64,000 nucleotides of DNA, taken from positions 124,001 to 188,000 of IMG/VR virus record IMGVR_UViG_3300046787_000286, one strand, 5' to 3'. The notes below the pieces were generated by a model, which was not told the origin of the DNA, made no database searches, and saw nothing but the letters and a program-made list of their open reading frames with translations. This document shows, in pieces, positions 2,318-27,234 of this stretch. Each line of letters begins with the position of its first letter. Position 1 is the stretch's first letter. The translations under genes and the position numbers were made by a program.

Positions 2318-3001
2318 TTATTTAGCCACGATCTGCTTGGTCTGCCGTGTGATATTAGGCACAACCATGTTCAGGAACAACAGCTCGCCGTCATTGTTGT
2401 GATCAATGAAGAAGTGGGCATGTGTCCAGTTTATCCACCAATTCTTAGTAGGAGTGTTGACCCAGTCTTTTAATCCCGGGCCCATACGTACATTCTCACG
2501 TGCCTTCAAGTATTCAACTAGTGTATTACGTTGGGAATCGTCGATTGCTTTGGATCTAAAATAAGTCCTATGAGTCCATTTTGGATCGTATAACGCAATT
2601 GTGCCCACTGGGCAAATTTGATGTGCTTCCTGTATTTGTATCTTGTCAAGAGTTGGCAAGTAATACAGTGTTTTTACTAAATCAAAGTCATTGGTATAAA
2701 CATACCCACGATCATAGGAAACTACAAACTTTAGTTGCTCTTTGTGACGAACTAATAAGCGACACAACTCCTCAAGGTTCTGTTGCATTCCTGAATCAAT
2801 CCGATGCATTTGAAAGCTGCCGCCGTAAAGCTGTTTGTGTTCTGTCCGCCAGCGATTACGCTCCTGTACTAATTTATCGATCTTATCAGGGTTCAGTCCC
2901 CTGATAATCCCGAGCTCGCGCAAATCAAATCTAACACTGTATCTGTATTTCCCGAAGAAAGGTTGATTGGTTTCCACGGGTTTTACTTTAAGGTTGGACA
3001 A
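2318..3001 (-). CDS. hypothetical protein
   Basis: 227 aa ORF overlapping clpA stop. Confidence 0.75.
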   Translation of the reverse strand: MSNLKVKPVETNQPFFGKYRYSVRFDLRELGIIRGLNPDKIDKLVQERNRWRTEHKQLYGGSFQMHRIDSGMQQNLEELCRLLVRHKEQLKFVVSYDRGYVYTNDFDLVKTLYYLPTLDKIQIQEAHQICPVGTIALYDPKWTHRTYFRSKAIDDSQRNTLVEYLKARENVRMGPGLKDWVNTPTKNWWINWTHAHFFIDHNNDGELLFLNMVVPNITRQTKQIVAK

Positions 3002-13185: not shown

Positions 13186-15126
13186 TTAGCAGTTCCAACG
13201 TCTACGTGCTTTACAAATTGCTTTGTCTGGAGTTTTAGCACATGAAATATTGTGCATGTTCATTTGACCTTTGGAGCGTGAGCAGTAGCTCTTTCTGCGT
13301 TTGCTTGCTTTAGAGCCCTTCTTTAGTTTAGAAGGCTTGGTAGTAACTGCTGTTTGCAGCTTTGATCCAGGATTTGCTCTGCGATATGCTTTTACAGCCT
13401 TGCGACTCATGCCGTCTGTTCTGTCACTCTTGTTGGCTTTTTGCCAGTCTTCGTTCAACTGAGAAGTCACGGCAAACACATACAGTTCATCGTGTGATAA
13501 AGATTCTAAATCTTCCCAAATCATTTCGGGATCTACGCCATTATGATCTGCAATTCGGTTAATAGAAGATTCAATTAAATCAAATTCTTCCGTTAATTCA
13601 GGATCTATACCTTGTGCTTTTTCGCTTTGTAGATAATCCCATACTGTCACAAGATAATCTTCAGCCAGGCTGATCTTTTCTTGACACCATTCAGGCAAGT
13701 TATCGCGATCGTCGATCACTTGTTGCAAGCCTTCTACAGCATTCTTTAGTGTGTGCAAGCTGCCGTGTGCCATGCCTGCTTCGTCATCGTACTCGGCATT
13801 GTAGTCTTCTGCTGCGCCTTGCTCTGTGATCCCACCGTCGCTGTCAAATCTTGGCTGAGTTCTTCCTGCCTGACCGCCTTGGGTCATATTACGCCCATTG
13901 CTTGGTATTCTTTTGGGTCCAATGGCTGGCGGCGATTTAAACGCACGGTTGCTTAGTTTAACAGTAGTACGACCTGGCACAGTGCGATCTATTGCAAGCC
14001 CAGTTTTTGGATCATGGGCAGCTCGCGCATAAAATGCAAGCTCGTCTCTAGTAAATCCGTCTTTTTCTTGGTGTGGCTCTGCTAGTGCCGCTAATTGATC
14101 TTTAATTCGTTGGCGTTCTGTGCTATTGTTAGTTGCGTGTAATTGCTTTTGCAACAGATGTCTCTGGTATATACGCTCATGCTCTTCATCATCGTCGTTT
14201 AAGCCTTCCGCCACACCTTCTTTAGTCTTTAAGCGTTTGAGAACAGCCATGTTCTCAGGCTTGCTCATGGTTTTCTTCAATGCGTCCAGCGCACGATCCT
14301 GTATGGCTTTGCTAGTCATCATACTATCTGGACCAATATGAATGTCTGGACCATTACTTGTATTGTGCTTGTCTCTTGACCCGTATGTGCTATGTCTCTT
14401 ACGATTGCTACCGTCACGTCCTGCACCGTCGCCGTCCATTTCTTTGATCTTATTGCCTTGTTGGTCAATGCCCGAGTTTGGTGGAAGATATACCTGCTTA
14501 CATGGCATGCATACTTGAACAGCATGTCCCTGGTACTTGCCACCTTGTAAGTCTCCGCCGCACTTGGGGCATGTGTGCATGTGGGAAATATCGCCGCGAT
14601 GCTTCTTTGGAAACTGTACAACTTCGCCTTCCTCTACAGATTCTTTTGGAACACAGTTATTAACTCGCACCCCACCCTTGACTTTGGTCTTGGGATTGCC
14701 AATTTTTTTGTTGTCCCAGCAAGCAGGATCCAAGCGAACTTTTTCTTCCGCTACACCTTGCTCAATGATGTCACCGCGAGCTTTAGCAACTTTAAACAAT
14801 GCAAACAAACTATCCCAGTCATGGGTGTTATTCATTTTGTCTTTGTATAGCTGTTGCTTTTCTGGTTTAATCTTAGCTAGGAACTTGTGCTTCATGCTGT
14901 GATTAGACGGAAATCCTGAGTAGTCATTGCCCAAATCTTTTACAGTGTAATCAAAGCCTTCGTCAATTGTTTTTAACTGACTGCGCAACTGATCTGCCAT
15001 TTTTAAATGATGATCACGTTTGATATCTTTGCTCTGCTTGGCAGCTTTTTCGTGAGCAGTAATTTGTGCCCATAATGCGTTTTGTTTACGCTGGTCTTTG
15101 TCTTCGTTGATTTCGTCGAATCTCAT
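13186..15126 (-). CDS. multi-module polyprotein-like putative internal head protein (646 aa)
   Basis: Start MRFDEINE; about 9 dissimilar modules separated by IDE, QGVAE, SVEE, IKE, EGVAE, QGAAE, LTE, LNE. Confidence 0.75.
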   Translation of the reverse strand: MRFDEINEDKDQRKQNALWAQITAHEKAAKQSKDIKRDHHLKMADQLRSQLKTIDEGFDYTVKDLGNDYSGFPSNHSMKHKFLAKIKPEKQQLYKDKMNNTHDWDSLFALFKVAKARGDIIEQGVAEEKVRLDPACWDNKKIGNPKTKVKGGVRVNNCVPKESVEEGEVVQFPKKHRGDISHMHTCPKCGGDLQGGKYQGHAVQVCMPCKQVYLPPNSGIDQQGNKIKEMDGDGAGRDGSNRKRHSTYGSRDKHNTSNGPDIHIGPDSMMTSKAIQDRALDALKKTMSKPENMAVLKRLKTKEGVAEGLNDDDEEHERIYQRHLLQKQLHATNNSTERQRIKDQLAALAEPHQEKDGFTRDELAFYARAAHDPKTGLAIDRTVPGRTTVKLSNRAFKSPPAIGPKRIPSNGRNMTQGGQAGRTQPRFDSDGGITEQGAAEDYNAEYDDEAGMAHGSLHTLKNAVEGLQQVIDDRDNLPEWCQEKISLAEDYLVTVWDYLQSEKAQGIDPELTEEFDLIESSINRIADHNGVDPEMIWEDLESLSHDELYVFAVTSQLNEDWQKANKSDRTDGMSRKAVKAYRRANPGSKLQTAVTTKPSKLKKGSKASKRRKSYCSRSKGQMNMHNISCAKTPDKAICKARRRWNC

Positions 15127-15584
15127 TTCAGTTCCTTGTTCTCTGCCGCAGCATTGTGTGCCTTTACTACTGCACCGGGTATAACACAACTGTTGTCATA
15201 TCGGGCAACTTCTCGATCCACATATTGTTTAATTATGACACCTTTTTCTCGGATAATCTTAATCTTTTCTTTTCCCTTAGCAGCCAGTTGTTCGTTAGCT
15301 GCTTGTGATTGTTGTTCAGCCAGTGCTACTCGAGCTTCCATTTCACGCACACGTTCACGCCAGGACATTTCTGAACTATATCCACCTTGGAAATAAACGC
15401 CCGATAAAAGAACTACTACAGATACTACCTGTGCAATCTTTATGTGCGGTGCCAGTGTGGGAATTAATCTGATCACATGCTTTAGTAAAAAGCAAGTTAA
15501 CACAGTGGCTAGTATACCTGCAATGAGAACTGCATCTACTACAAATGCTAGAAAAGAGTCAGGAAGTAGATGCAGAATAAACAT
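15123..15584 (-). CDS. i-spanin (Rz)-like inner membrane protein
   Basis: N-terminal TM helices, coiled coil, late Cys; directly downstream of endolysin. Confidence 0.65.
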   Translation of the reverse strand: MFILHLLPDSFLAFVVDAVLIAGILATVLTCFLLKHVIRLIPTLAPHIKIAQVVSVVVLLSGVYFQGGYSSEMSWRERVREMEARVALAEQQSQAANEQLAAKGKEKIKIIREKGVIIKQYVDREVARYDNSCVIPGAVVKAHNAAAENKELK

Positions 15585-15587
15585 TGA

Positions 15588-16202
15588 TTATGCTCCGAAT
15601 ACGTGTAAGGCGTGTTCGTAGTGCTTGATACGATCTTCTAAACCAATGTAGCCACCATTGATGACTTTGGTCATTGTTTTGATATCGCCTGCGTCGGCCC
15701 ACTTGTTTAGATTGTTTGTTTCCCAGAACCAGCAGCCTGATTGCACAGCGCCTTCAAATGTTCCCAGGTATTCACTTACTTCTTCCACGGCTGTTTCGAT
15801 AGAGTCAGCAAAGTTTTGATAGTTGTTTTTGCCTGTTAGCTGAATCAATCCACGTCCGCAGTAGCGATAGCCGTCACCTGACTCTTCGGGACCATTGCCC
15901 ATTCTATTGGCATACACTCTGTTAGCAATCTTTTCGCCTTTGTTGGCGTACTGTGCAGCCGTAGCATCGTCGGGGAAATACTTGGGGAATACTTTTCTTA
16001 AACTAGCTGCTTTGTAGTTTAGGTTTTCTTTCAAGAACACATAGTTGCCTGATTCGTGTGCAGTTTGTGCAATAAAAGCTGCCACACGCTGCGGTGTATC
16101 AATTTCGTATTCTGGAAGAATTTCGTTTAGGGCATGTACCCAGTAATCTAAGTAAGCGTTTTTGCCAATACAGCTTTGTAGTTGTTCTTTTGTGATGTTC
16201 AT
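15588..16202 (-). CDS. GH19 family endolysin
   Basis: AAFIAQTAHES, ENLNY, YCGRGLIQLTGKNNY, TKVINGGYIGLEDR. Confidence 0.92.
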   Translation of the reverse strand: MNITKEQLQSCIGKNAYLDYWVHALNEILPEYEIDTPQRVAAFIAQTAHESGNYVFLKENLNYKAASLRKVFPKYFPDDATAAQYANKGEKIANRVYANRMGNGPEESGDGYRYCGRGLIQLTGKNNYQNFADSIETAVEEVSEYLGTFEGAVQSGCWFWETNNLNKWADAGDIKTMTKVINGGYIGLEDRIKHYEHALHVFGA

Positions 16203-16237
16203 TGGGGCTCCTGATAATAATTGTTATCGGGTATTTA

Positions 16238-17023
16238 TTAATATTTCACCCCAATTTGGTCTAGTAGCTGCACTGGATGTAGTTGTATCCAATGCTCAAT
16301 GAGATTCGTCTGTGCTGTATTAACTGTGGGTATTAGATTTTTATCAACAAGTATGCTGCCACGACTATTAACCAGTTCTTGCAATGAAACACACTCGTCG
16401 GCAGCATTGATTAAATCAAATGTATGATTCAACACAGGAGTTTTTTGATATATTGTTGTATCATTGGCAACAATATAATCCTGCCAGGAATTACACCCAA
16501 CAAAGGATTGTGTGTATGGGTCCAGCAGTAGTTCTTGTTGTATACCCTGTGGTAGTGTGTTGATATGTCTAGGACTGCTACACCGTGGCCAATCTGGCGC
16601 TTTAACAGCGGTGTAGTGACTGTTCCACAGTGCCAAAAAGTGTCTATTGAGCCCAAATTGTGTACGGTTGTAATACCAGTGAGCATTTTTATATTGAGCT
16701 AGTGTGAGCTGACTGTTGACATCACTGTACAGCATGATCTTTTTAGCAGATCTCTGTGTGAATTCTTCCAAGTTGGGGTCGCAATAAAAGTAAATCTTAT
16801 TTGCAGAATTATCACACCCGCTGGTTTTATTATTATCGGGCCAGTATTCAGTGTGCTTCCACTCAGTGTGATTTTTGATATTCCATTGATTGGCTATTGC
16901 AGTTGGGATATCAACAGGCTTGACAAATTCTGCATGATACTGTTGGGTCAACAGCAGCAAATGAAATAATAAAAATCCACCACATGCTGGGGAATACCCC
17001 AAGGTGATGTCATTTTGTATCAT
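16238..17023 (-). CDS. hypothetical protein, possibly a degenerate sulfotransferase-like fold
   Basis: ORF at end of modification operon; YSPACGGFLL loop, YTAVKAPDWP motif. Confidence 0.55.
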   Translation of the reverse strand: MIQNDITLGYSPACGGFLLFHLLLLTQQYHAEFVKPVDIPTAIANQWNIKNHTEWKHTEYWPDNNKTSGCDNSANKIYFYCDPNLEEFTQRSAKKIMLYSDVNSQLTLAQYKNAHWYYNRTQFGLNRHFLALWNSHYTAVKAPDWPRCSSPRHINTLPQGIQQELLLDPYTQSFVGCNSWQDYIVANDTTIYQKTPVLNHTFDLINAADECVSLQELVNSRGSILVDKNLIPTVNTAQTNLIEHWIQLHPVQLLDQIGVKY

Positions 17024-17222
17024 TTCTTCCCCACTGTATATAATTCCACACACGCTCGTGGCCAAAGTAAAGAACTGTGTTAAACGTCAATTGAATTAGT
17101 GCAATAGTGCTGCTTATTGCAAAATCTCCTAGTATAGCATAGCTAATAGCAAATGTAGCCCCAGATCCGCACACACGCCAGCTTACTGTTTTGGCTATGC
17201 TTCTAGCAGTGGTTTCACTCAT
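17010..17222 (-). CDS. DUF2061-like small membrane protein
   Basis: RSIAKTVSWR...YFGHERVWNYIQWG. Confidence 0.8.
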   Translation of the reverse strand: MSETTARSIAKTVSWRVCGSGATFAISYAILGDFAISSTIALIQLTFNTVLYFGHERVWNYIQWGRNDTK

Positions 17223-17650
17223 TTGGAATCCAGGATAGTTTGTGCCACTAGCTCGCACCAGTAAGGCGCTTGTTGTGTTGTGATTCTAAAGTCCCAGTGG
17301 TCCGGCTGAACAAACATAGCATTGGTATCTTCGTAACGCCCGGCCGGGATAGTATCTACCCACACAGTCCAGTCTGCATGAAAGTTTGTGCGCATTTCGG
17401 GCAGTGGACAAACAAAGTCGCAGATAACATAGTCCATATCAGTCATTGCATCTGCTAGTTCACGCATTCTGTGTGACTGTCGTATGCGCCCTTCGTAACT
17501 GAAATCCCAGTCATTGTACTTTTCCCGCACAATATCAGCATTGAGCCAGCCTATCTTTTGATTGGCGTTTTGCAGTCGCTCTAGAACATACTGTGCCAGG
17601 TATGTTTTTCCAGCGCCTGGCAGTCCCATTACTAATATTCGTTGTGTCAT
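17219..17650 (-). CDS. adenylylsulfate (APS) kinase-like P-loop kinase
   Basis: GLPGAGKT, WLNADIVR, DFSYEGRIRQ, CDFVCP resemble CysC. Confidence 0.8.
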   Translation of the reverse strand: MTQRILVMGLPGAGKTYLAQYVLERLQNANQKIGWLNADIVREKYNDWDFSYEGRIRQSHRMRELADAMTDMDYVICDFVCPLPEMRTNFHADWTVWVDTIPAGRYEDTNAMFVQPDHWDFRITTQQAPYWCELVAQTILDSK

Positions 17651-18267
17651 TTCTTTTTCCGACTTGCGTGTTTAGTCACAGCATCTAATGGTTGTTCTGC
17701 CACTGAGTGAAAATACTTGGCGTTGGTATCTTCTTTTAGTATTTCATCAATTAAAGGATTGTTATAATCGATGGGGAATTCTAAATCTTTTTCCACTCTT
17801 TGTAGATACTGGCGCCCATATAAATGCAACAGTTCGTAACTTAAAAAGGTAGGCATTGCAAACTCTGAATATGCTGCTGTTGCTTGATCTAACGTAACAC
17901 CGCCGCGCACACGAGTTTCTTGATAATTGAGAATATTACGATCACGCCCTAGCACTGCGAATTTAACTCTGTGTCCTAGGTTCTGCACACCTGTTACAAA
18001 TGCTTTGAAATCAGGCACTGTAGGCGTGCCGTTATTCATGTAAGGCACACTCATTGAGGTAACGTGCCAGTCACTTACGCCCCACGGAGCAGACTTTAGA
18101 TCAGCAGGGTTTTGCCAGTAGTGTGCCCAAGGCTCTTCATCGTGGCCGATCCAGTAGTCAGAGTTTAAAGCACGCCAACCTAGAACTTGACGATGCAAAG
18201 CAAATATCTTGCTCCATAAATGATTTCCGGAACCTTGGGGACCTGTGAGAATTAATAGTGTTTTCAT
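17647..18267 (-). CDS. sulfotransferase-fold protein
   Basis: ILTGPQGSGNHLWS loop, AVLGRD, FLSYELL. Confidence 0.6.
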   Translation of the reverse strand: MKTLLILTGPQGSGNHLWSKIFALHRQVLGWRALNSDYWIGHDEEPWAHYWQNPADLKSAPWGVSDWHVTSMSVPYMNNGTPTVPDFKAFVTGVQNLGHRVKFAVLGRDRNILNYQETRVRGGVTLDQATAAYSEFAMPTFLSYELLHLYGRQYLQRVEKDLEFPIDYNNPLIDEILKEDTNAKYFHSVAEQPLDAVTKHASRKKK

Positions 18268-18920
18268 TATCTATAATTTAGCCACTGTATAAACTGTTCG
18301 GTTTTTTCTGTGCGAATTCCTGTTAATTGAAATGTTACTCTGGGATCATATCCTGCATTGGCTGTGCAGTGCGGAATATTCTGCCAATCAAATGTAGTAA
18401 TTTCTCCTGCACGCCATTGATTGTGATGATAATTTCCATATTCCCAAAACTGTCCAGGTTGCCAGTCTGTCAATTGAATCATTATTCGCATGACTGAGTC
18501 AGGATCTTCAGGAGCCCATTTGTACAGCTTGTCAATGTGCAAGTTCCATAACTCCCCGGGCAACTGCACATGTATACGATTCATACAGTTCTCTAGCCCA
18601 AAGCTGTCGGACAGCTTTTGCAATGAGTTTGGGATCTGCCAGTTTAGATGTGTAATAAGCATGTCAGTAGGGATTCCTACTCTGCTCATGTCGTATTCTT
18701 CAGCAGCTAATTCGTCAGGAGGTGCTTCGATTCCTTCACCTTTGTATCCACGTGTGGCCCAGGTAGCAGGTTTAGCGTTTGCAATAATGCCAGGCAAGTC
18801 TGCTTCCCAGTTAGGAGTAACATGCCCTAGATACTGTACCACATCCATTGGATTGTCTTTTCTACCTGAATTAAAGTGATAATCACTTTGTGCTCGCAAT
18901 GTTTCCCAATTTGATTTCAT
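18267..18920 (-). CDS. 2OG-Fe(II) dioxygenase (Asp/Asn beta-hydroxylase-like)
   Basis: LHID...PHCTAN...RVTFQLTG (HxD...H...R jelly-roll motif). Confidence 0.8.
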   Translation of the reverse strand: MKSNWETLRAQSDYHFNSGRKDNPMDVVQYLGHVTPNWEADLPGIIANAKPATWATRGYKGEGIEAPPDELAAEEYDMSRVGIPTDMLITHLNWQIPNSLQKLSDSFGLENCMNRIHVQLPGELWNLHIDKLYKWAPEDPDSVMRIMIQLTDWQPGQFWEYGNYHHNQWRAGEITTFDWQNIPHCTANAGYDPRVTFQLTGIRTEKTEQFIQWLNYR

Positions 18921-19549
18921 ATTACAGTTACCTTTATGTCGCTTTTGTTGTAGTTTTGTCTATATTCGCTGCCAGGGTATTGAATCCCAAGTGCATCGCA
19001 TAACTCTAGGTTGTTGCTTGGATGTTTTCTTGTGGATTTATAGTCCCAGATGGCATTTTGAATACTTTGATTTTGCCGATGTATAATTCCAGCCATGGTC
19101 TTGAAGTCTTGAAAATACTCGTGATAGTCCGGGTATGTGATATCAAAGTGCCCGCACTTTACCCACCAACCCAAGCAAGCATCATCGCCGCGATGTACCA
19201 TAACAACAGGAGTTTCAGGAAAGAGTTCTTTGAGATAGTGGATGTGATTTGAGAATACATGGCTTTTAATAATTCGTATACCTTGCGGTTCCGCAGATTG
19301 AAATGGTACAGCAAAGATGTTCTCCAGTTGTGCTTTGTTTAGCGTGGTTAAATCTTCGGGCAGTGAGCTGATCATTCCTGGGTCAAAATAAGCACCCAAA
19401 TGCATTAGTTCTCTTGTGCCCGAAGCGTCGTGATAATATGTCCACTCGTCCCTATAGTCCGAGCGGTCAATGTCCGACGAGTAATAAATGTTTTTCACAA
19501 CCGAGCTCCATTTAGAGCCCGGTGCGCCTGCTACAAAGACGTATTTCAT
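18917..19549 (-). CDS. sulfotransferase-fold protein
   Basis: VFVAGAPGSKWS, IIKSH, LKELFPETPVVMVHR. Confidence 0.65.
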   Translation of the reverse strand: MKYVFVAGAPGSKWSSVVKNIYYSSDIDRSDYRDEWTYYHDASGTRELMHLGAYFDPGMISSLPEDLTTLNKAQLENIFAVPFQSAEPQGIRIIKSHVFSNHIHYLKELFPETPVVMVHRGDDACLGWWVKCGHFDITYPDYHEYFQDFKTMAGIIHRQNQSIQNAIWDYKSTRKHPSNNLELCDALGIQYPGSEYRQNYNKSDIKVTVI

Positions 19550-20523
19550 TCTTTTGTCAAGTCAATTTTAGATAGCACAGGAATAAATGCAGCACGTAGC
19601 TCTGTCATGTGCTTGTACAAGCCTGCAGGAGTTAGTTCATCTTCTGCGTAGAAAATAACGTTGGCATCTGTGTATTCTTTATACTCAGGTGAACGAACTG
19701 CTGCTGCAAATTCCTTTTGATACCATGCTACAATATCTTTGTTAGTGCCTGGCGGCAATTGAATTGACCATGCAGCATACACGTTAATACCTGGAGCCAC
19801 AGTGTTTAGCAACGGAACCCGGGGAAACTGCGACATCTTTTGTGTGCCTGTAAACCCAATTGGCTTTACTTTACCTGCGTCGATCAGTGCCTTGGCAACT
19901 GCAATAGGCATGATACCAAATTCTGTGCCTACCTTGCCATCGTAGCTGGCAACTGATTGCACAGCTGGCATAGGACCGTTAAACTTAATGGGCTTTACTT
20001 GATCTCGATTACCACGGCCTTTTTCCATTAGGTATTCAAATGCAGTGCGATGTGCGCCACCGCCGATTGCTACATTAATAGGACTGGTTGCAGTGCGAAT
20101 TAAACGCACAAATTGTTCGGGTGTGTTAACATCGCTTTTGACTGATGCGACCAGCACCAAGGGTGATTTGCCCATGGTTAGTACATCTACGAAACTATCA
20201 AATTGGTATTTCTTTAAATTCTTTTCCCAAATATCATTTGTTACGTAGCTTGACATGTGCGATGGCAAGTTAATAGTGTGCCCATCATTAACTGCTTCTA
20301 GGAATTTATTATTGGCAATAACAGAGTCAGCTCCGGGAATGTTTTGCACAACATACACAAAGTTGGGGTTCTTTTTTTGCACAATTTCTGCTAGTTTTCT
20401 AAAGGCCATTTCATTGCCTGCACCGGGTGTGTTGCCAATGTACACAGTTACAGGCTTAGTGGGCTCCCAGGCAAATGCCAGCACAGGTACAAGCAGTGCA
20501 GCGATTAATAATTTTTTGATCAT
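19546..20523 (-). CDS. Bug/TctC tripartite tricarboxylate transporter substrate-binding protein
   Basis: Signal peptide, WEPTKPVTVYIGNTPGAG, VVQNIPGA, DGHT, GKVKPIG, FPRVP; 325 aa; AAGGAG RBS. Confidence 0.88.
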   Translation of the reverse strand: MIKKLLIAALLVPVLAFAWEPTKPVTVYIGNTPGAGNEMAFRKLAEIVQKKNPNFVYVVQNIPGADSVIANNKFLEAVNDGHTINLPSHMSSYVTNDIWEKNLKKYQFDSFVDVLTMGKSPLVLVASVKSDVNTPEQFVRLIRTATSPINVAIGGGAHRTAFEYLMEKGRGNRDQVKPIKFNGPMPAVQSVASYDGKVGTEFGIMPIAVAKALIDAGKVKPIGFTGTQKMSQFPRVPLLNTVAPGINVYAAWSIQLPPGTNKDIVAWYQKEFAAAVRSPEYKEYTDANVIFYAEDELTPAGLYKHMTELRAAFIPVLSKIDLTKE

Positions 20524-20577
20524 CGTTTAGTCTCCTTAAATAGTATTGAAAATCTAACGTATATATCAAAATTTCCT

Positions 20578-21297
20578 ATGAACACCAAAATTTTTAACCT
20601 TTTAACAAAAAATTTGCAGACTGCATTTAATTTGCCCAAGTATGCGAATATTTCTATCACGCCAGACACTGTGGTGCAGGACCTGCCCTGGACCCCTGCA
20701 CGTTATAGAAAGTTCAAAGACGCTGTGGAAGCAGAACTCAGCTTGCCCTGTGACTATGTGGGCTCACTGGCTTCTATAACACACGATCTAAGCGAGCGCT
20801 ACATACATAGATTCTTTGGGGAAATATGGAAACCCAGAACAAATGATTATGATTACACAGGTTGGCAATTAACAGATGAAATTAACGCTCTCAATCCTCG
20901 CAGTGTTCTTGATGTTGGCTGTGGCTATCATCCTTTTAAAGGTCGTATTCATAATCTTGTGGGCATTGATCCTTATAACAATTGTGCCGATTACATGGTT
21001 GATATTTTGGATTATGTTGGTAGTCATGATGTTGTTATTGCTCTAGGATCAATTAACTTTAATGATCGTGCAGAAATAGAATCACGCTTTGCAAAATGCG
21101 TAGATGTATTGGATAAAGGTGGGAAATTTTATCTACGTGCCAACCCTGGTATCACGCACAAAACAGGGCCGTATGTGGAAATCTTTAACTGGACGTTTGA
21201 AGTAGTTAAGGAATTTGGGGACAAATATAATTTACAGTTGGATACCTTTAAAAAGGACGCCAACGATAGATTGTATTTTGTTTACACCAAGTTGTAA
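20578..21297 (+). CDS. class I SAM-dependent methyltransferase with N-terminal ACP-like helical domain
   Basis: VLDVGCG motif I, GIDP, DVVIALGSINF, LDKGG; divergent from the Bug operon. Confidence 0.8.
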   Translation: MNTKIFNLLTKNLQTAFNLPKYANISITPDTVVQDLPWTPARYRKFKDAVEAELSLPCDYVGSLASITHDLSERYIHRFFGEIWKPRTNDYDYTGWQLTDEINALNPRSVLDVGCGYHPFKGRIHNLVGIDPYNNCADYMVDILDYVGSHDVVIALGSINFNDRAEIESRFAKCVDVLDKGGKFYLRANPGITHKTGPYVEIFNWTFEVVKEFGDKYNLQLDTFKKDANDRLYFVYTKL

Positions 21298-21944
21298 CTA
21301 TCAATTAGTCGGAATGCTGCATCGTGTGCAGCTTCTAAAGGATGCAGGGTCTGACTAATCTCAAACCCATTTTCTTTGCTCCACTCCAGTAGGTTTTTAT
21401 TGTCAAAGCGTGTCATGTAAGGTTCGCAATAGCCTTGCAGTGCTGACACAGCAGGAGTAGTATTCCATCTAGCATCAAACATTAGATCGTCCATGTAAGT
21501 CATAATAAACTTGTTGCCCGACGCCTTTAACGAATCTATTGCAGTTTTGACATTGATCAAGCTGGTGATTTTATCCCGCAATTCGCTATGATAATGTTTG
21601 TAGTATGTTTCGGCAGCAGGATCTGTATCAACTGGCATTACTGTTTGCCAAGGTGATCTCCACAACTTGTGTTCTTCTGTTGTGGTAAAACTAAACCTAT
21701 CAATCCAGCTCCAGCCTATTACATATACAGCTGGTTCTACATCAGTTAATTGACTCAACACACGCTCAGTAATTTCTAAATTACCAGCCCCGGGGCGGGC
21801 ATAGCATGTGTAATCCCAGTTGTGTTGTTTGGCCAACAGTGCAGGCCATGTGTAGTTGCTGTATGTGGCCTTGGCCAAATATCTACTGTCATCGTGTAAA
21901 TCAGTTCCGAAAATGAAACTGCATCCAAAACTCTTTAATTTCAT
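21282..21944 (-). CDS. SGNH-like hydrolase/acyltransferase
   Basis: FGCSF block I, ARPGAGN, VIGWSWIDR, C-terminal HPLEAAH. Confidence 0.7.
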   Translation of the reverse strand: MKLKSFGCSFIFGTDLHDDSRYLAKATYSNYTWPALLAKQHNWDYTCYARPGAGNLEITERVLSQLTDVEPAVYVIGWSWIDRFSFTTTEEHKLWRSPWQTVMPVDTDPAAETYYKHYHSELRDKITSLINVKTAIDSLKASGNKFIMTYMDDLMFDARWNTTPAVSALQGYCEPYMTRFDNKNLLEWSKENGFEISQTLHPLEAAHDAAFRLIDSYNLV

Positions 21945-25651: not shown

Positions 25652-26395
25652 TTGAGTAGAAACCGCGCTTTAAAAGCACAACAAACCCAAAGTCGTCGCA
25701 TGCCAGTAGAAACAGACAACAACGTCCTACAATTCCAAACCCGCAAAGTCGCAAATAAACCTGTAGACTTGATTCCTCGTTCGAAGAATCAGGAGAGTTT
25801 GGTATTGGCTCTACGAGATGCTTCGCAGCACATAGTAATCACAGCAGGCCCTGCAGGAACAGGTAAAACGTACCTGGCAATGCAAGCCGCTGTCAAAGCA
25901 CTTAAAGAAGGAGATTGTGATAGAATTATCTTGACACGCCCAGCGGTTGGTGTGGAAGGAGAGCAACATGGATTCTTACCCGGAAACCTTGTTGCAAAAA
26001 TGGAGCCCTGGACTAGACCATTGCTAGACGTATTACGTGAGTATTATCGTCCGCAAGAAATTGCAGCAATGATCGAAGATCAAGTAATAGAGATAGCACC
26101 TCTAGCATTCATGCGTGGAAGAACTTTCAAACACTCATGGATTATCGCTGATGAAATGCAAAACGCCACACCAGCACAAGTAAAAATGCTAATGACAAGA
26201 ATCGGATCAAACAGCAAGATCATTATCACCGGAGACGTGGAGCAGGCCGATCGCCAAAATGGCGACAATGGCTTAATGGACCTCTGCGAAAGGTTGCAGA
26301 AGGGAGGTGTTAATGGAATTGCTGTGTGCCACTTAGATGGCCGTGATATTCAGCGGCACAAGATCATTGGATCTGTGTTAAAGTTGTATCAGTAA
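25652..26395 (+). CDS. phoH: PhoH family ATPase
   Basis: GPAGTGKT, LTRPAV, GFLPG, FMRGRTF, DEMQN, TGDVEQAD; TTG start with GGAG RBS. Confidence 0.95.
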   Translation: MSRNRALKAQQTQSRRMPVETDNNVLQFQTRKVANKPVDLIPRSKNQESLVLALRDASQHIVITAGPAGTGKTYLAMQAAVKALKEGDCDRIILTRPAVGVEGEQHGFLPGNLVAKMEPWTRPLLDVLREYYRPQEIAAMIEDQVIEIAPLAFMRGRTFKHSWIIADEMQNATPAQVKMLMTRIGSNSKIIITGDVEQADRQNGDNGLMDLCERLQKGGVNGIAVCHLDGRDIQRHKIIGSVLKLYQ

Positions 26396-26966
26396 TTAAG
26401 TCATAGGCTTCGCGCCAATTTTTGACTACCGGATACGGGCACTCATGATTCATGTTGTGCCCGTGTTCCATTAATACGCTCCGTAAACCCATTGCATGGC
26501 CAACATCGGCATTTTCGGGCTTGTCCTCAAACCACCAACATCCTGATCCTGCATACTCTTCTAGTGCATAGTTCTTGTCTGCACCGGTATCCAAGCACAC
26601 AATTTTCTCAAATGCAGTAGCACCAAACAACTTGTTCAAGTTCATTTCACGCAGACGTTGTGCATTAATATCTCGGCTCAGACTTGTGATACAGTGAAAC
26701 ACATAGCCATGCTCTTCATGCAAGCGTTTGATGTAATACATTGCATCACGGTGCGGGGGAAGAAATCCAATTGCAGCTGATTCGTTAAACATACGGATCA
26801 GCTTCTTGGCCTGTGGTTTGTCGATGTTGTAACGTTCGCCAATATCGTAGATGAATTGGCCGCCTTCTATTTTAGAGAAGCCGTGCTCTTCCATCCAAAT
26901 AGCAAACGCATACTCCCAATTCAAACACACTCCGTCCGCGTCTACTAAGATTAATTTATTTTTCAT
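26364..26966 (-). CDS. HAD-family 5'(3')-deoxyribonucleotidase-like phosphatase
   Basis: ILVDADGV, CITS, FEDKPEN motifs. Confidence 0.8.
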   Translation of the reverse strand: MKNKLILVDADGVCLNWEYAFAIWMEEHGFSKIEGGQFIYDIGERYNIDKPQAKKLIRMFNESAAIGFLPPHRDAMYYIKRLHEEHGYVFHCITSLSRDINAQRLREMNLNKLFGATAFEKIVCLDTGADKNYALEEYAGSGCWWFEDKPENADVGHAMGLRSVLMEHGHNMNHECPYPVVKNWREAYDLITDTTLTQIQ

Positions 26967-27234
26967 TTTTTTCCAAGTTAACTTCGTAACCGTTTTCGTT
27001 AAACAATCGAGTGATAATGTTTTCGTAGTGTTGCATATAGTAAGCAACAATAGTATCAAAGTTCTTGACTACATCCAATCCGCTCATTGAGGCTTTGGTT
27101 ACTTCTAGCTTTTTAAAGTCCAAAATAACATTGGCAGTTTGGATGTCACGTGTTTTTAGATTTTTTGACACAGCCATTGCTTCGTCGATTTGACCGTTGG
27201 CTTTTTTATAATAAGTGATTACTAGATATCTCAT
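26956..27234 (-). CDS. hypothetical protein
   Basis: 92 aa coupled ORF. Confidence 0.7.
   Translation of the reverse strand: MRYLVITYYKKANGQIDEAMAVSKNLKTRDIQTANVILDFKKLEVTKASMSGLDVVKNFDTIVAYYMQHYENIITRLFNENGYEVNLEKNEK

What the first reader, a model, noticed from the sequence alone, without database searches (positions are those of the whole stretch)
16238..21944. Bug/TctC binding protein heading a sulfotransferase-oxygenase-APS kinase operon
Seen: a tightly coupled run of periplasmic Bug/TctC protein, sulfotransferase-fold protein, 2OG-Fe(II) oxygenase, second sulfotransferase-fold protein, APS kinase-like protein, DUF2061 and an unknown. A divergent methyltransferase and an SGNH-like gene flank it. 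No TctA/TctB genes are present. Established: APS kinase makes PAPS for sulfotransferases, and Bug proteins bind small carboxylates in betaproteobacteria. Inference: a phage pathway that makes a sulfated/hydroxylated/methylated molecule together with its own receptor (signalling or scavenging), or that decorates host surface or virion glycans. Both sulfotransferase loops are non-canonical (GAPGSKWS, GPQGSGNH), so the chemistry may differ.
Basis: partly seen in the sequence, partly recalled or inferred. Interest (0 to 1): 0.75.

Follow-up and report, generated by a model that had tools for sequence, protein, structure and literature searches.

The report
Phage sulfation operon with borrowed transporter part
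A large freshwater phage carries a widely conserved operon that pairs an exported organic-acid-binding protein with enzymes that look built to hydroxylate, sulfate and methylate an unknown target; this phage metabolic module has not been studied and its product is unknown.

Summary
The window is part of a 214 kb IMG/VR phage record (about 62% complete) from freshwater.

- **Gene identities.** On the minus strand lie a signal-peptide TctC/Bug binding protein, S1, OG, S2, K, DUF2061 and an unknown. A methyltransferase is transcribed the other way, and an SGNH-like gene lies beyond it.
  - S1 is a sulfotransferase fold nearest tyrosylprotein sulfotransferases.
  - OG is an aspartyl-beta-hydroxylase-like Fe/2-oxoglutarate oxygenase.
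  - S2 is a sulfotransferase fold nearest CurM/OLS.
  - K is a short APS-kinase-like kinase.
- **Conservation.** The core (MT | TctC-S1-OG-S2-K) recurs in many uncultured jumbo-phage contigs. It stays together through rearrangements.
- **New findings.**
  - Most relatives have K fused to an NMNAT-like nucleotidyltransferase, laid out like a PAPS synthase.
  - Some relatives replace the orphan TctC with TctA, an outer-membrane barrel and a divergent TctC, or add a TRAP binding protein.
  - S1 and OG are fused once and are weakly predicted to bind each other.
  - Five near-complete relatives lack TctA and canonical ATP sulfurylase.
- **Best reading.** Organic-acid uptake through host TctAB is coupled to a PAPS-fed hydroxylate-then-sulfate tailoring line.

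The substrate is unknown, and the sulfotransferase P-loops are non-canonical. The closest precedent is the hydroxylase-sulfotransferase-PAPS synthetase neighbourhoods predicted in bacteria in 2010.

The parts
19546..20523 (-). TctC/Bug-family periplasmic solute-binding protein (325 aa) with a Sec signal peptide. First gene of the run and an orphan (no TctA/TctB here).
   Evidence: Pfam TctC 7.7e-18. Solved TTT binding proteins match at 3.7e-22. The signal peptide is conserved. It is the most conserved gene of the island, with median identity 79.7%. It falls in 2098 clusters at 90% identity.
18917..19549 (-). S1: sulfotransferase-fold protein (210 aa), nearest tyrosylprotein sulfotransferases. 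Its P-loop is non-canonical (AGAPGSKWSS).
   Evidence: Model pLDDT 90.2. VIA-align top 7 hits are TPST1/2 at Z 11.5-10.6. AFDB 'sulfotransferase family' clusters match at E 1e-15 with TM 0.82. Pfam Sulfotransfer_3 is weak at 0.004. Invariant residues are listed.
18267..18920 (-). OG: Fe(II)/2-oxoglutarate dioxygenase candidate of the aspartyl/asparaginyl beta-hydroxylase kind (217 aa).
   Evidence: Invariant H128, D130, H184 and R194. Asp_Arg_Hydrox is the only Pfam family hit among distant members, in 4 of 41 with best E 0.0018. ESM Atlas neighbours carry PF05118, including bacterial sulfotransferase fusions. The C-terminal motif aligns with AtsK. 893 representatives at 50% identity.
17647..18267 (-). 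S2: second sulfotransferase-fold protein (206 aa), nearest CurM/OLS and TPST. Its P-loop reads GPQGSGNH.
   Evidence: Model pLDDT 91.9. Foldseek PDB top hit is TPST1 at 1.6e-4. VIA-align gives OLS/CurM sulfotransferase domains Z 11.5/11.4 and TPST Z 10.2-10.6. AFDB hits are mostly named sulfotransferase. The nearest ESM Atlas cluster is viral, with 9886 members.
17219..17650 (-). K: APS-kinase-like P-loop kinase, short form (143 aa). It lacks the C-terminal nucleotidyltransferase domain that most relatives have.
   Evidence: Pfam APS_kinase 6.6e-10, over the cut-off. phrog_10255 'kinase' 7e-24. Solved APS kinases are the best PDB matches. Long forms of 264-289 aa occur in relatives.
17010..17222 (-). 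DUF2061 small predicted membrane protein. The likely start, ATG 17222, overlaps the K stop codon (the mechanical ORF starts at GTG 17258). Accessory: it changes position within the module in relatives.
   Evidence: Pfam DUF2061 2e-20. Sequence read. Positions in relatives. Present in 7 of 38 loci.
16238..17023 (-). Unknown protein (about 261 aa from ATG 17023; the mechanical ORF starts at TTG 17065). Rare accessory gene.
   Evidence: No Pfam, PHROG, NCBIfam or PADLOC hit. Present in 3 of 38 loci. Start codon read.
20578..21297 (+). MT: probable class-I SAM-dependent methyltransferase (239 aa). It is the only plus-strand gene in this block, divergent from TctC, and its 3' end overlaps SG by 16 nt.
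   Evidence: Invariant VLDVGCG and further motifs. Weak CmoB (1e-3) and 1wzn methyltransferase (0.12) hits. Within 5 kb of OG in 37 of 38 loci. Median identity 77.7%.
21282..21944 (-). SG: SGNH/GDSL-like hydrolase candidate (220 aa).
   Evidence: Invariant G-C-S9, G54-N55 and H201/H207. hhalign 89.8% to the relatives' GDSL family, which hits Pfam Lipase_GDSL_2 at 1.9e-6. Present in 15 of 38 loci.
20524..20577 (.). 54-bp AT-rich spacer between the divergent MT and TctC genes. A Shine-Dalgarno sequence (AAGGAG) lies before TctC.
   Evidence: Sequence read. Promoter-like hits in the region are not above background.

Best explanation
This is an auxiliary metabolic operon of a clade of freshwater jumbo phages, made of two coupled halves.

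(1) Uptake. The first gene makes a TTT (TctC/Bug) solute-binding protein that is exported to the host periplasm. The phage has no membrane subunits of its own, so the protein must dock on the host's TctAB permease to pull in an organic acid.

(2) Tailoring in the cytoplasm.
- OG, an AspH-like Fe(II)/2-oxoglutarate dioxygenase, probably works in a complex with S1. It installs a hydroxyl group, and S1 (TPST-like) sulfates it.
- S2 (CurM/OLS-like) performs a second sulfation.
- K phosphorylates APS to PAPS, the sulfate donor. In most relatives K is fused to a small nucleotidyltransferase that would make the adenylyl-sulfate. In this phage that step is left to the host.
- The divergent methyltransferase and the SGNH esterase add or remove further groups.

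I take the substrate to be the imported carboxylate or a derivative of it.

Shown: the genes, their folds and families, their co-conservation, the orphan status of TctC, and the domain fusions. Inferred: every enzymatic activity, PAPS as the donor, the S1-OG complex (only weakly predicted), and above all the link between the transported molecule and the molecule that is modified.

Co-conservation and linkage:
- In loci seeded on OG alone, MT is near OG in 37 of 38, S1 in 35, S2 in 31, a TTT part in 32 and K in 20.
- The module keeps together when gene order changes (S1-S2-OG versus S1-OG-S2). It also keeps together when it sits on the other side of the conserved y193/y190 pair and when other genes are inserted.
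- S1 and OG are one 433-aa ORF in L061.
- ESM Atlas lists bacterial Sulfotransfer_3 + Asp_Arg_Hydrox fusion clusters as structural neighbours.
- The predicted S1-OG complex scores 0.44 against a best control of 0.01. Two of three runs share 82% of their contacts. The interface covers S1's invariant 123-137 loop and OG 183-190, next to His184.

Transport theme:
- A subclade replaces TctC with TctA (1e-92), an outer-membrane barrel and a divergent TctC (hhalign 96.8%). Others add a TRAP DctP protein (3.6e-43).
- Five 97-100% complete relatives have no TctA.
- TctC is the most conserved gene of the island, as expected if it must fit a host partner.

PAPS supply:
- K aligns to APS kinases through the P-loop, the (D/N)xD-xx-R motif, the F-S...R...R motif and the F-I/V-x-P motif.
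- The long form is an APS-kinase-like domain followed by an HxGH/ISxTxxR nucleotidyltransferase domain. That is the domain order of PAPS synthase.
- No canonical ATP sulfurylase or CysD/CysH family member is present in the five complete relatives.

Precedent:
- Bacterial beta-hydroxylase + sulfotransferase + methyltransferase + PAPS synthetase neighbourhoods have been predicted to hydroxylate and then sulfate (PMC2938197).
Against: - No activity has been measured.
- Both sulfotransferase P-loops lack the Lys/Arg at the canonical position. S1 is below the Pfam cut-off and S2 has no Pfam hit.
- K covers only the first two thirds of the APS-kinase profile and is far below the NCBIfam CysC cut-offs.
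- OG has no significant family hit of its own, and I had no structural model of it.
- A subclade keeps MT, S1, OG and S2 with no TTT gene nearby (L061, L087, L091 and others), so the enzymes do not strictly need a phage TctC.
- K is within 5 kb in only 20 of 38 loci.
- The island is a hot spot for insertions, so transport genes could be independent auxiliary genes. All these phages are related, so part of the synteny is inherited.
- S1's nearest structures act on proteins, not small molecules.
- The complex prediction is rated 'weak support' by the tool itself.
Confidence: 0.4

Rival explanations
1. The enzymes are a protein or peptide modification system. OG beta-hydroxylates Asp/Asn (or another residue), and S1/S2 O-sulfate Tyr or the new hydroxyl on a phage or host protein, such as a virion fibre or an exported protein. 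TctC is a separate nutrient-uptake gene, or conceivably the target itself.
For: - S1's seven best structural matches are tyrosylprotein sulfotransferases, about 2 Z units above the kinases. S2 also matches TPST at Z 10.2-10.6.
- OG's only family link is to Asp/Asn beta-hydroxylases.
- The bacterial precedent was predicted to act on collagen-like or tail-collar proteins.
- Collagen-repeat ORFs exist in 2 of 5 complete relatives, one about 14 kb from the module in each.
Against: - No collagen-like, Gly-rich or tail-collar ORF is found in the 214 kb record.
- There is no tail-collar domain in the five complete relatives, and no collagen repeat in three of them.
- No conserved short precursor ORF lies in the core.
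- The module sits among replication and auxiliary genes (PhoH, clamp loader), not structural genes.
Confidence: 0.25
2. There is no common pathway. The region is a hypervariable island where unrelated auxiliary genes (uptake proteins, oxygenases, transferases) accumulate. Their adjacency reflects shared descent and tight phage gene packing.
For: - The island holds many variable inserts: a di-iron protein, a GATase, GDSL esterases, DctP, an outer-membrane barrel and unknowns.
- Overlapping genes are usual in phages.
- All relatives belong to one clade, with flanking genes 68-77% identical.
- Some phages lack TctC or K.
Against: - MT, S1, OG and S2 stay together through reordering and relocation.
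- S1 and OG are fused in L061, fused counterparts exist among the bacterial neighbours, and a complex is predicted.
- An APS-kinase-like gene next to two sulfotransferase folds makes a functional set.
Confidence: 0.15
3. The module remodels the host cell envelope during infection, by hydroxylating, sulfating, methylating or deacylating LPS, a lipid or a polysaccharide. The purpose would be to block superinfection or to stop progeny sticking to debris.
For: - From my own knowledge, the AspH family includes the lipid hydroxylases LpxO and OlsC.
- SGNH/GDSL esterases and sulfotransferases often act on glycans.
- From my own knowledge, phages are known to alter surface receptors.
Against: - No glycosyltransferase, flippase or lipid-A gene is in the module.
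- OG, S1, S2 and K have no signal peptide or membrane segment.
- The closest structures are TPST and CurM/OLS, not carbohydrate sulfotransferases.
Confidence: 0.1
4. S1 and S2 are not sulfotransferases. They would be P-loop kinases or transferases that use another 3'-phospho-ADP-linked or nucleotide donor made by K and the nucleotidyltransferase, in the manner of CoA synthase or NadR.
For: - The P-loops are non-canonical.
- Adenylate and other nucleotide kinases score Z about 9, not far below the sulfotransferases.
- The nucleotidyltransferase domain is nearest NMN adenylyltransferases (2qjt at 1.6e-5).
- A PP-loop-like protein and a GATase occur in some relatives.
Against: - The top structural and AFDB matches are consistently sulfotransferases.
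- S2 lacks the Walker Lys (its loop reads GSGNH). S1's loop is one residue short of a Walker A motif.
- The K domain is nearest APS kinases.
- No phosphoribosyltransferase was seen in the module.
Confidence: 0.08

Closest known systems
Bacterial beta-hydroxylase / sulfotransferase / methyltransferase / PAPS synthetase gene neighbourhoods predicted by Iyer, Aravind and co-workers (Nucleic Acids Res 2010, PMC2938197)
   Same: The same enzyme set: an AspH-family dioxygenase, P-loop sulfotransferases, a methyltransferase and a PAPS-making enzyme. The same proposed logic applies: hydroxylate, then sulfate the new hydroxyl. Sulfotransferase-hydroxylase fusions also occur.
   Different: - Here the set sits in a phage and is headed by an exported TTT binding protein.
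- No collagen-like or tail-collar protein is co-encoded.
- The methyltransferase is not fused to a PhyH oxygenase.
- The PAPS part is a short APS-kinase-like protein, with or without an NMNAT-like domain, instead of a canonical PAPS synthetase.
- The bacterial systems are themselves only predicted.
Tripartite tricarboxylate transporters (TctABC) and the orphan Bug binding proteins of Betaproteobacteria
   Same: Full-length homology to solved TTT binding proteins such as BugD, Bug27 and the terephthalate-binding protein. It has a signal peptide. It is an orphan binding protein without adjacent membrane subunits, as (from my own knowledge) most Bug genes are.
   Different: - It is encoded by a virus, and no close cellular homologue was found. 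The three hits in the genome collection are phage contigs binned into MAGs.
- The ligand is unknown.
- It is translationally coupled to cytoplasmic tailoring enzymes.
Phage-encoded periplasmic binding proteins used as auxiliary metabolic genes (for example cyanophage PstS); tctA and 2OG-Fe(II) oxygenase listed as putative AMGs on SUP05 viral contigs (PMC4164917)
   Same: A phage supplies one component of a host uptake system to raise nutrient import during infection. A tctA domain hit and a 2OG oxygenase have been listed as putative viral auxiliary genes.
   Different: The transporter family is different (TTT, not ABC). Here the binding protein is conserved together with a specific enzyme set. 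I found no paper describing a phage TctC.
PAPS synthase (APS kinase fused to ATP sulfurylase) and CysC
   Same: The K domain aligns to APS kinases through the P-loop and the APS-binding motifs. In relatives it is fused to a nucleotidyltransferase-superfamily domain, in the same N-kinase, C-transferase order as (from my own knowledge) animal PAPS synthase.
   Different: - The transferase domain is only about 125 aa and is nearest NMN adenylyltransferases, not ATP sulfurylase.
- The kinase lacks the C-terminal lid region of CysC and fails the NCBIfam cut-offs.
- The window's copy has no transferase domain at all.
Tyrosylprotein sulfotransferases (TPST1/2) and the 'activating' sulfotransferase domains of CurM and olefin synthase
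   Same: These are the best structural matches of S1 (TPST, Z 11.5) and S2 (OLS/CurM, Z 11.5). About 165 of about 210 residues align.
   Different: - Sequence identity is 12-17%.
- The canonical PRSG(T/S)T loop is replaced by APGSKWS (S1) or PQGSGNH (S2).
- The phage proteins are about 70 residues shorter.
- There is no carrier-protein or thioesterase partner.

Membership tests
TTT solute-binding protein (TctC/Bug, PF03401) | Significant full-length match to the family model and to solved members | tested here: met
   Pfam 65.4 bits against a cut-off of 27. The profile matches 11 solved TTT binding proteins at 3.7e-22 to 3.7e-14 over residues of about 20-300.
TTT solute-binding protein (TctC/Bug, PF03401) | Export signal (periplasmic location) | tested here: met
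   An N-terminal hydrophobic signal ending AFA|WEP is conserved in 22 aligned homologues. This was judged by reading the sequence; no predictor was run.
TTT solute-binding protein (TctC/Bug, PF03401) | Works with TctA/TctB membrane subunits | tested here: inconclusive
   No TctA in the window's record or in five 97-100% complete relatives. A subclade has TctA next to a divergent TctC. The host partner is unknown.
PAPS-dependent sulfotransferase superfamily (S1, S2) | Sulfotransferase fold | tested here: met
   S1: TPST at Z 11.5, and AFDB sulfotransferase clusters at E 1e-15 with TM 0.82. S2: OLS/CurM at Z 11.5, TPST at 1.6e-4, and mostly sulfotransferase-named AFDB hits. P-loop kinases are close runners-up.
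PAPS-dependent sulfotransferase superfamily (S1, S2) | Canonical 5'-phosphosulfate-binding loop with Lys/Arg (P-K/R-S-G-T/S-T) | tested here: not met
   The invariant loops are A-P-G-S-K-W-S (S1) and P-Q-G-S-G-N-H (S2). S1 has a Lys two positions later. S2 has none in the loop.
PAPS-dependent sulfotransferase superfamily (S1, S2) | 3'-phosphate-binding Arg after the central strand (R-x-x-x-D/N ... S) | tested here: inconclusive
   Invariant R120-x-D-D (S1) and R108-D-x-N...Q116 (S2) lie at the expected place. The Ser is replaced. This was judged by motif spacing only, with no ligand model.
PAPS-dependent sulfotransferase superfamily (S1, S2) | Family model match over the curated cut-off | tested here: not met
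   S1 hits Sulfotransfer_3 at 17.8 bits against a cut-off of 27. S2 has no hit. Profile searches of the PDB by sequence found nothing.
Fe(II)/2-oxoglutarate dioxygenase, Asp/Asn beta-hydroxylase family (PF05118) | His-x-Asp ... His iron triad and a 2-oxoglutarate-binding Arg | tested here: met
   H128 is invariant. D130, H184 and R194 are at least 90% conserved in a 41-sequence alignment that reaches down to 23% identity. H184 and R194 align with the matching residues of AtsK.
Fe(II)/2-oxoglutarate dioxygenase, Asp/Asn beta-hydroxylase family (PF05118) | Significant match to the family model, or a double-stranded beta-helix fold | tested here: inconclusive
   The window protein has no Pfam hit. 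4 of 41 relatives hit PF05118, best E 0.0018. An ESM Atlas feature hit scores 0.96 with 200 shared features to a PF05118 cluster, and a relative's model gives TM 0.76.
APS kinase (CysC, PF01583) | Family model match and Walker A motif | tested here: met
   39.7 bits against a cut-off of 21.1, with GLPGAGKT as Walker A. The best PDB matches are APS kinases (2yvu at 6.3e-10, PAPSS1).
APS kinase (CysC, PF01583) | Full-length equivalence, including the C-terminal lid, and the D-G-D motif | tested here: not met
   Only profile positions 5-92 of 152 match. NCBIfam apsK scores 32.3 bits against 138.7. The motif reads N-A-D instead of D-G-D, with the second Asp and the following Arg invariant.
Hydroxylase-sulfotransferase-PAPS synthetase neighbourhoods of Iyer et al. 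2010 | Co-encoded beta-hydroxylase, sulfotransferase(s), methyltransferase and a PAPS-making enzyme | tested here: met
   All four are present and co-conserved.
Hydroxylase-sulfotransferase-PAPS synthetase neighbourhoods of Iyer et al. 2010 | Co-encoded collagen-like or tail-collar substrate protein | tested here: not met
   None in the 214 kb record. There is no Collar domain in five complete relatives. Collagen repeats occur in 2 of 5 relatives and are not adjacent to the module.
SGNH/GDSL hydrolase (SG) | Conserved blocks with Ser, Gly, Asn and His | tested here: inconclusive
   Invariant G-C-S9, G54-N55 and H201/H207. hhalign gives 89.8% to a family whose representative hits Lipase_GDSL_2 at 28.9 bits, below the cut-off of 32.9. 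SG itself has no Pfam hit.

The most novel reading that the evidence does not exclude
The phage hijacks the host's TctAB permease with its own binding protein to import a specific organic acid. It converts this acid, by beta-hydroxylation and O-sulfation (with methylation), into a sulfated metabolite not yet described. The donor would come from a minimal, non-canonical PAPS synthase, in which an APS-kinase-like domain is fused to a 125-aa NMNAT-like nucleotidyltransferase acting as ATP sulfurylase. Alternatively, the odd P-loops of S1 and S2 mean that a different 3'-phospho-ADP-linked group is transferred.
Probability: 0.15. Interest if true: 0.85.

Novelty: new variant of a known kind. Interest (0 to 1): 0.62.

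Why it matters
The families are abundant in freshwater viromes. The TctC protein has about 2100 clusters and OG about 2350 clusters at 90% identity, and the ESM Atlas cluster nearest S2 has about 9900 members. None of them has been studied.

If the reading is right, three things follow:
- These jumbo phages reprogramme both organic-acid uptake and sulfur-donor metabolism of their hosts.
- It would be the first case of a virus supplying a TTT binding protein.
- It would give an experimentally tractable version of the hydroxylate-then-sulfate systems that have stayed purely predicted since 2010.

The kinase-nucleotidyltransferase fusion could be a new, very small route to PAPS. The high conservation of the orphan binding protein offers a handle for finding the still unknown host.

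Tried and rejected
**Searches that gave nothing useful**
- Sequence-profile searches of the PDB with S1, S2, OG, MT and SG.
- hhalign found no relation between S1 and S2, or between either and the other P-loop-like island proteins.
- DNA and tblastn searches of deposited phage genomes found no relative of the module.
- The genome-collection scan for a cellular donor of TctC returned only three phage-like contigs binned into Haliscomenobacter and Flavobacterium MAGs. The host stays unknown. The genome search does not draw relatives for a virus record.
- The 90%-cluster searches listed only close relatives, so they gave no link to named families.
- PADLOC gave no defence-system match beyond generic P-loop similarity.
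- No RNA run was listed as holding the TctC gene.
- Literature searches for phage TctC, DUF2061 and phage sulfotransferase/APS kinase found no description of this module.

**Ideas considered and dropped**
- DNA hypermodification cluster: the run contains an exported binding protein and sulfotransferase folds, and none of the usual enzymes.
- NAD salvage (Bug27-like nicotinate uptake plus NMNAT plus GATase/PP-loop): there is no phosphoribosyltransferase, the window lacks the NMNAT-like domain, and the kinase is APS-kinase-like.
- A second nucleotidyltransferase gene in the window: the 24-aa tblastn hit at 1655-1726 lies in no ORF.
- DUF2061 as a sulfate-assimilation marker: it occurs in only 2 of 81 Bacteroidota genomes, and I did not follow it further.
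- Collagen-like substrate: absent from the record and from 3 of 5 complete relatives.

Full report
**What the window is**

The window is bases 124001-188000 of a single 214,006-base IMG/VR virus record. The record is linear and about 62% complete by CheckV. Phage genes surround the finding:
- a GH19 endolysin at 15588-16202 (phrog_181, 5e-75);
- a clamp loader, a ClpA-like ATPase and a radical-SAM protein;
- PhoH at 25652-26395.

Near-identical DNA is held only by freshwater, lake and wetland metagenomes. No deposited phage genome resembles the region.

**The observation**

*TctC (19546-20523, minus strand).* This is a clear TTT binding protein.
- It scores 65.4 bits in Pfam against a cut-off of 27.
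- A profile of the phage family matches eleven solved TTT binding proteins at 3.7e-22 to 3.7e-14. These include BugD, Bug27 and the terephthalate-binding protein.
- It has a conserved signal peptide ending AFA|WEP.

*K (17219-17650).* K passes the Pfam APS_kinase cut-off, but only on profile positions 5-92 of 152. It is far below the NCBIfam CysC cut-offs. Solved APS kinases are its best PDB matches. The alignments keep four elements:
- the P-loop;
- N-A-D-x-x-R, in place of D-G-D-x-x-R;
- F-S...G-R-x-R;
- F-V-x-P.

*DUF2061.* The Pfam match is unambiguous (2e-20).

*S1 and S2.* Neither has a usable sequence match. Both give confident AlphaFold models, with pLDDT 90.2 and 91.9.
- For S1, VIA-align puts seven tyrosylprotein sulfotransferase entries on top (Z 11.5-10.6, about 165 residues aligned). 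OLS/CurM sulfotransferase domains and adenylate kinases follow at about Z 9.
- S1 also has two AFDB clusters named sulfotransferase at E 1e-15 and 5e-14, with TM about 0.8.
- For S2, the OLS and CurM sulfotransferase domains lead (Z 11.5 and 11.4), followed by TPST1/2 (Z 10.2-10.6).
- For S2, Foldseek's best PDB hit is TPST1 at 1.6e-4, and most AFDB hits are named sulfotransferase.

*OG.*
- The pattern H128-x-D130 ... H184 ... R194 is kept in a 41-sequence alignment that reaches down to 23% identity.
- The only Pfam family that any relative touches is Asp_Arg_Hydrox, in 4 of 41 members with best E 0.0018.
- The ESM Atlas places it beside PF05118 clusters.
- Its C-terminal W..GD...D....H......R block aligns with the 2-oxoglutarate enzyme AtsK.

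*MT and SG.* MT has class-I SAM methyltransferase motifs and only weak hits. SG has SGNH-type invariant residues and an hhalign link (89.8%) to a GDSL-matching family in relatives.

*Gene junctions.* Junctions from TctC to the last gene overlap by 1-14 nt. DUF2061 most likely starts at ATG 17222, overlapping K's stop codon, and the unknown gene at ATG 17023.

**Relatives and co-conservation**

Two scans of IMG/VR, one seeded on TctC and one on OG, returned 123 loci on contigs up to 524 kb. Mapping the window's proteins onto them shows a recurring core: MT (opposite strand) | TctC - S1 - OG - S2 - K.

To avoid the bias of the TctC-seeded set, I counted only distinct OG-seeded loci with at least 5 kb on both sides (n = 38). 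The number of loci with each gene within 5 kb of OG is:

| Gene | Loci (of 38) |
|---|---|
| MT | 37 |
| S1 | 35 |
| S2 | 31 |
| TctC | 27 |
| TctA | 5 |
| any TTT part | 32 |
| K | 20 |
| SG | 15 |
| DUF2061 | 7 |
| 275-aa unknown | 3 |

The module stays together through three kinds of change:
- the order varies (S1-S2-OG in some loci);
- it lies on the other side of the conserved y193/y190 pair in others;
- other genes are inserted.

All these phages are related, with flanking genes at 68-77% median identity. Part of the synteny is therefore inherited, but the rearrangements argue for selection on linkage. TctC is the most conserved gene of the island (median 79.7%). S1 stands at 68.8%, OG at 61.1% and S2 at 57.8%.

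The families are abundant:
- TctC has 2098 clusters at 90% identity.
- OG has 2351 clusters at 90% identity and 893 at 50%.
- The ESM Atlas cluster nearest S2 has 9886 members, almost all viral.

**What the relatives add**

1. *A two-domain K.* In most relatives K is 264-289 aa. The same kinase domain is followed by a domain of about 125 aa with GRWQPWHAGH and ISATKIR motifs. This domain gives weak CTP_transf_like hits. Its best solved matches are NMN adenylyltransferases (2qjt at 1.6e-5, 1f9a at 0.016). The window's K, and a few others, lack it. A nucleotidyltransferase paired with a kinase of the APS-kinase kind is the logic of PAPS synthase. From my own knowledge, it is also the logic of CoA synthase.
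2. *Other transport genes.* In five loci the orphan TctC is replaced by three genes:
   - TctA (Pfam 1e-92);
   - an outer-membrane beta-barrel (1e-9);
   - a 351-aa signal-peptide protein that hhalign relates to TctC (96.8%).

   Other loci carry a TRAP DctP binding protein (3.6e-43).
3. *Other enzyme genes.* The island can also hold the following:
   - a ferritin-like di-iron protein;
   - a class-I glutamine amidotransferase / peptidase C26 protein;
   - GDSL esterases;
   - further proteins with sulfotransferase-like N-terminal loops;
   - a PP-loop-like protein.
4. *An S1-OG link.* S1 and OG form one 433-aa ORF in L061. The ESM Atlas lists bacterial clusters that fuse Sulfotransfer_3 with Asp_Arg_Hydrox. 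A complex prediction for S1 + OG scored 0.44 (median of three runs) against 0.01 for the best control. Two runs share 82% of their contacts. The interface joins S1's invariant 123-137 loop to OG 183-190, beside His184. The tool rates this as weak support.
5. *Genes that complete relatives lack.* Five relatives of 338-524 kb are 97-100% complete, two of them with terminal repeats. They have no TctA, no ATP-sulfurylase family member, no PAPS_reduct/CysD family member and no tail-collar domain. Collagen repeats occur in two of the five, none adjacent to the module. The window's own record has none of these.

**How it most likely works**

The exported binding protein has no phage membrane partner in most genomes. 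It is under the strongest constraint in the island. It is swapped for a complete or different uptake set in some relatives. The simplest reading is that it docks on the host TctAB permease to import an organic acid.

The cytoplasmic enzymes form a coherent line:
- an AspH-like dioxygenase makes a hydroxyl group;
- two sulfotransferase-fold proteins sulfate it;
- the APS-kinase-like K supplies PAPS.

APS would come from the fused nucleotidyltransferase, or from the host where that domain is missing, as it is here. MT and SG would add or remove further groups.

I commit to the two halves being coupled, meaning that the imported carboxylate or a derivative is the substrate. My confidence in this whole reading is about 0.4. 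My grounds are that transport parts of several kinds keep being recruited to this one island, and that S2's nearest structures sulfate beta-hydroxy acyl groups.

The evidence shows the identities, folds, linkage and fusions. It does not show any activity, the donor, or the substrate.

**Rivals**

- *Protein or peptide modification.* This is the strongest rival. S1's nearest structures are protein tyrosine sulfotransferases, OG's family is best known for modifying proteins, and the 2010 prediction for the bacterial systems was a protein substrate. Against it, no collagen-like, Gly-rich, tail-collar or short precursor gene travels with the module.
- *No common pathway.* The region could be a mere collection of independent auxiliary genes.
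- *Envelope remodelling.* The enzymes could alter LPS, lipids or polysaccharides of the host.
- *Non-sulfate chemistry.* The odd P-loops (APGSKWS and PQGSGNH in place of P-K/R-S-G-T-T) could mean that a different group is transferred.

**Comparison with what is known**

The closest described thing is a set of bacterial gene neighbourhoods reported by Iyer et al. (PMC2938197). They combine beta-hydroxylase, sulfotransferase, methyltransferase and PAPS synthetase genes, and were predicted to hydroxylate and then sulfate co-encoded collagen-like or tail-collar proteins. The phage module shares the enzyme set but not the substrate genes, and it adds the TTT binding protein.

Phage-borne uptake components are known in principle. 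A tctA domain hit and a 2OG oxygenase were once listed as putative auxiliary genes on SUP05 viral contigs. I found no description of a phage TctC or of this operon.

I rate it a new variant of a known, but only predicted, kind.

**Limits**

- The host is unknown. The only hits in the genome collection are phage contigs binned into MAGs.
- No transcript data were found.
- The window's record is incomplete, so absences in it are weak evidence. The absences I rely on come from the five near-complete relatives.

Noticed in passing
L105:11276-12079 (and 26 other loci): In most relatives the kinase is a two-domain protein. An APS-kinase-like domain is followed by an NMNAT-like nucleotidyltransferase of about 125 aa (HxGH and ISxTxxR motifs). 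This could be a minimal PAPS-synthase-like enzyme. The window's copy lacks the second domain.
   Followed up: partly
L111:6266-9333 (also L048, L110, L113, L123): A subclade of these phages carries TctA (Pfam 1e-92), a small outer-membrane beta-barrel and a divergent 351-aa TctC in place of the orphan TctC. This is a near-complete virus-encoded uptake system, though no TctB was recognised.
   Followed up: partly
L053:6633-7574 (also L032, L119): A TRAP-transporter DctP solute-binding protein (Pfam 3.6e-43) sits in the same island in some relatives.
   Followed up: no
L061:4695-5996: S1 and OG are one 433-aa ORF in a single contig. It may be a genuine fusion or a sequencing artefact. Neighbouring relatives have two genes here.
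   Followed up: partly
L124, L125 (Haliscomenobacter MAG) and L126 (Flavobacterium MAG): Contigs in two GTDB species-representative MAGs carry this phage module with its phage flanks (y193, y190, endolysin). They are probably phage contigs binned into bacterial genomes. They may also be a faint hint to the host.
   Followed up: partly
window 20578-21297 (+) and 21282-21944 (-): The methyltransferase is the only plus-strand gene in a long minus-strand block. Its 3' end overlaps the 3' end of the SGNH-like gene by 16 nt. This orientation is kept in all relatives.
   Followed up: no
window 16210-16231: A 9-bp-stem hairpin lies in the 35-nt gap between the unknown 275-aa gene and the endolysin gene. 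It has no T-run on the coding strand.
   Followed up: no
window 25652-26395 (+): A PhoH-like gene (Pfam 2.7e-70), a classic phage auxiliary gene, lies about 4 kb from the module, next to a weak NT5C-like 5'-nucleotidase hit at 26364-27059.
   Followed up: no
window 2988-5231 (-): A 747-aa ClpA/ClpB-like two-AAA ATPase (phrog_4871, 3e-242). It shows nucleotide-level similarity to the Clp-like genes of Pseudomonas, Staphylococcus and Acinetobacter jumbo phages.
   Followed up: no
window 59542-63546 (+) and 33140-36013 (-): Two very long ORFs (1334 and 957 aa) have no PHROG match at 1e-4.
   Followed up: no
window 43736-45262 (-): A 508-aa radical-SAM domain protein (phrog_14086, 1e-17).
   Followed up: no
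G087:C1:337382-338500, 167477-168433, 91145-93202, 77102-78211, 180753-181691; G084:C1:30446-31609: Two complete relatives carry ORFs with long collagen-like repeats: five in G087 and one in G084. In each genome one of them lies about 14 kb from the module. The other three complete relatives have none.
   Followed up: partly
L105:8785-9363 (also L008, L011): An extra, divergent S1-like paralogue (192 aa, 33% identical to S1) is inserted between TctC and S1 in some relatives.
   Followed up: no
window 13186-15189 (-): A 667-aa protein whose last 80 or so residues match DUF6321 and several PHROGs of unknown function. In relatives its length varies widely, and it is flanked by duplicated copies of the 153-aa neighbour.
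   Followed up: no
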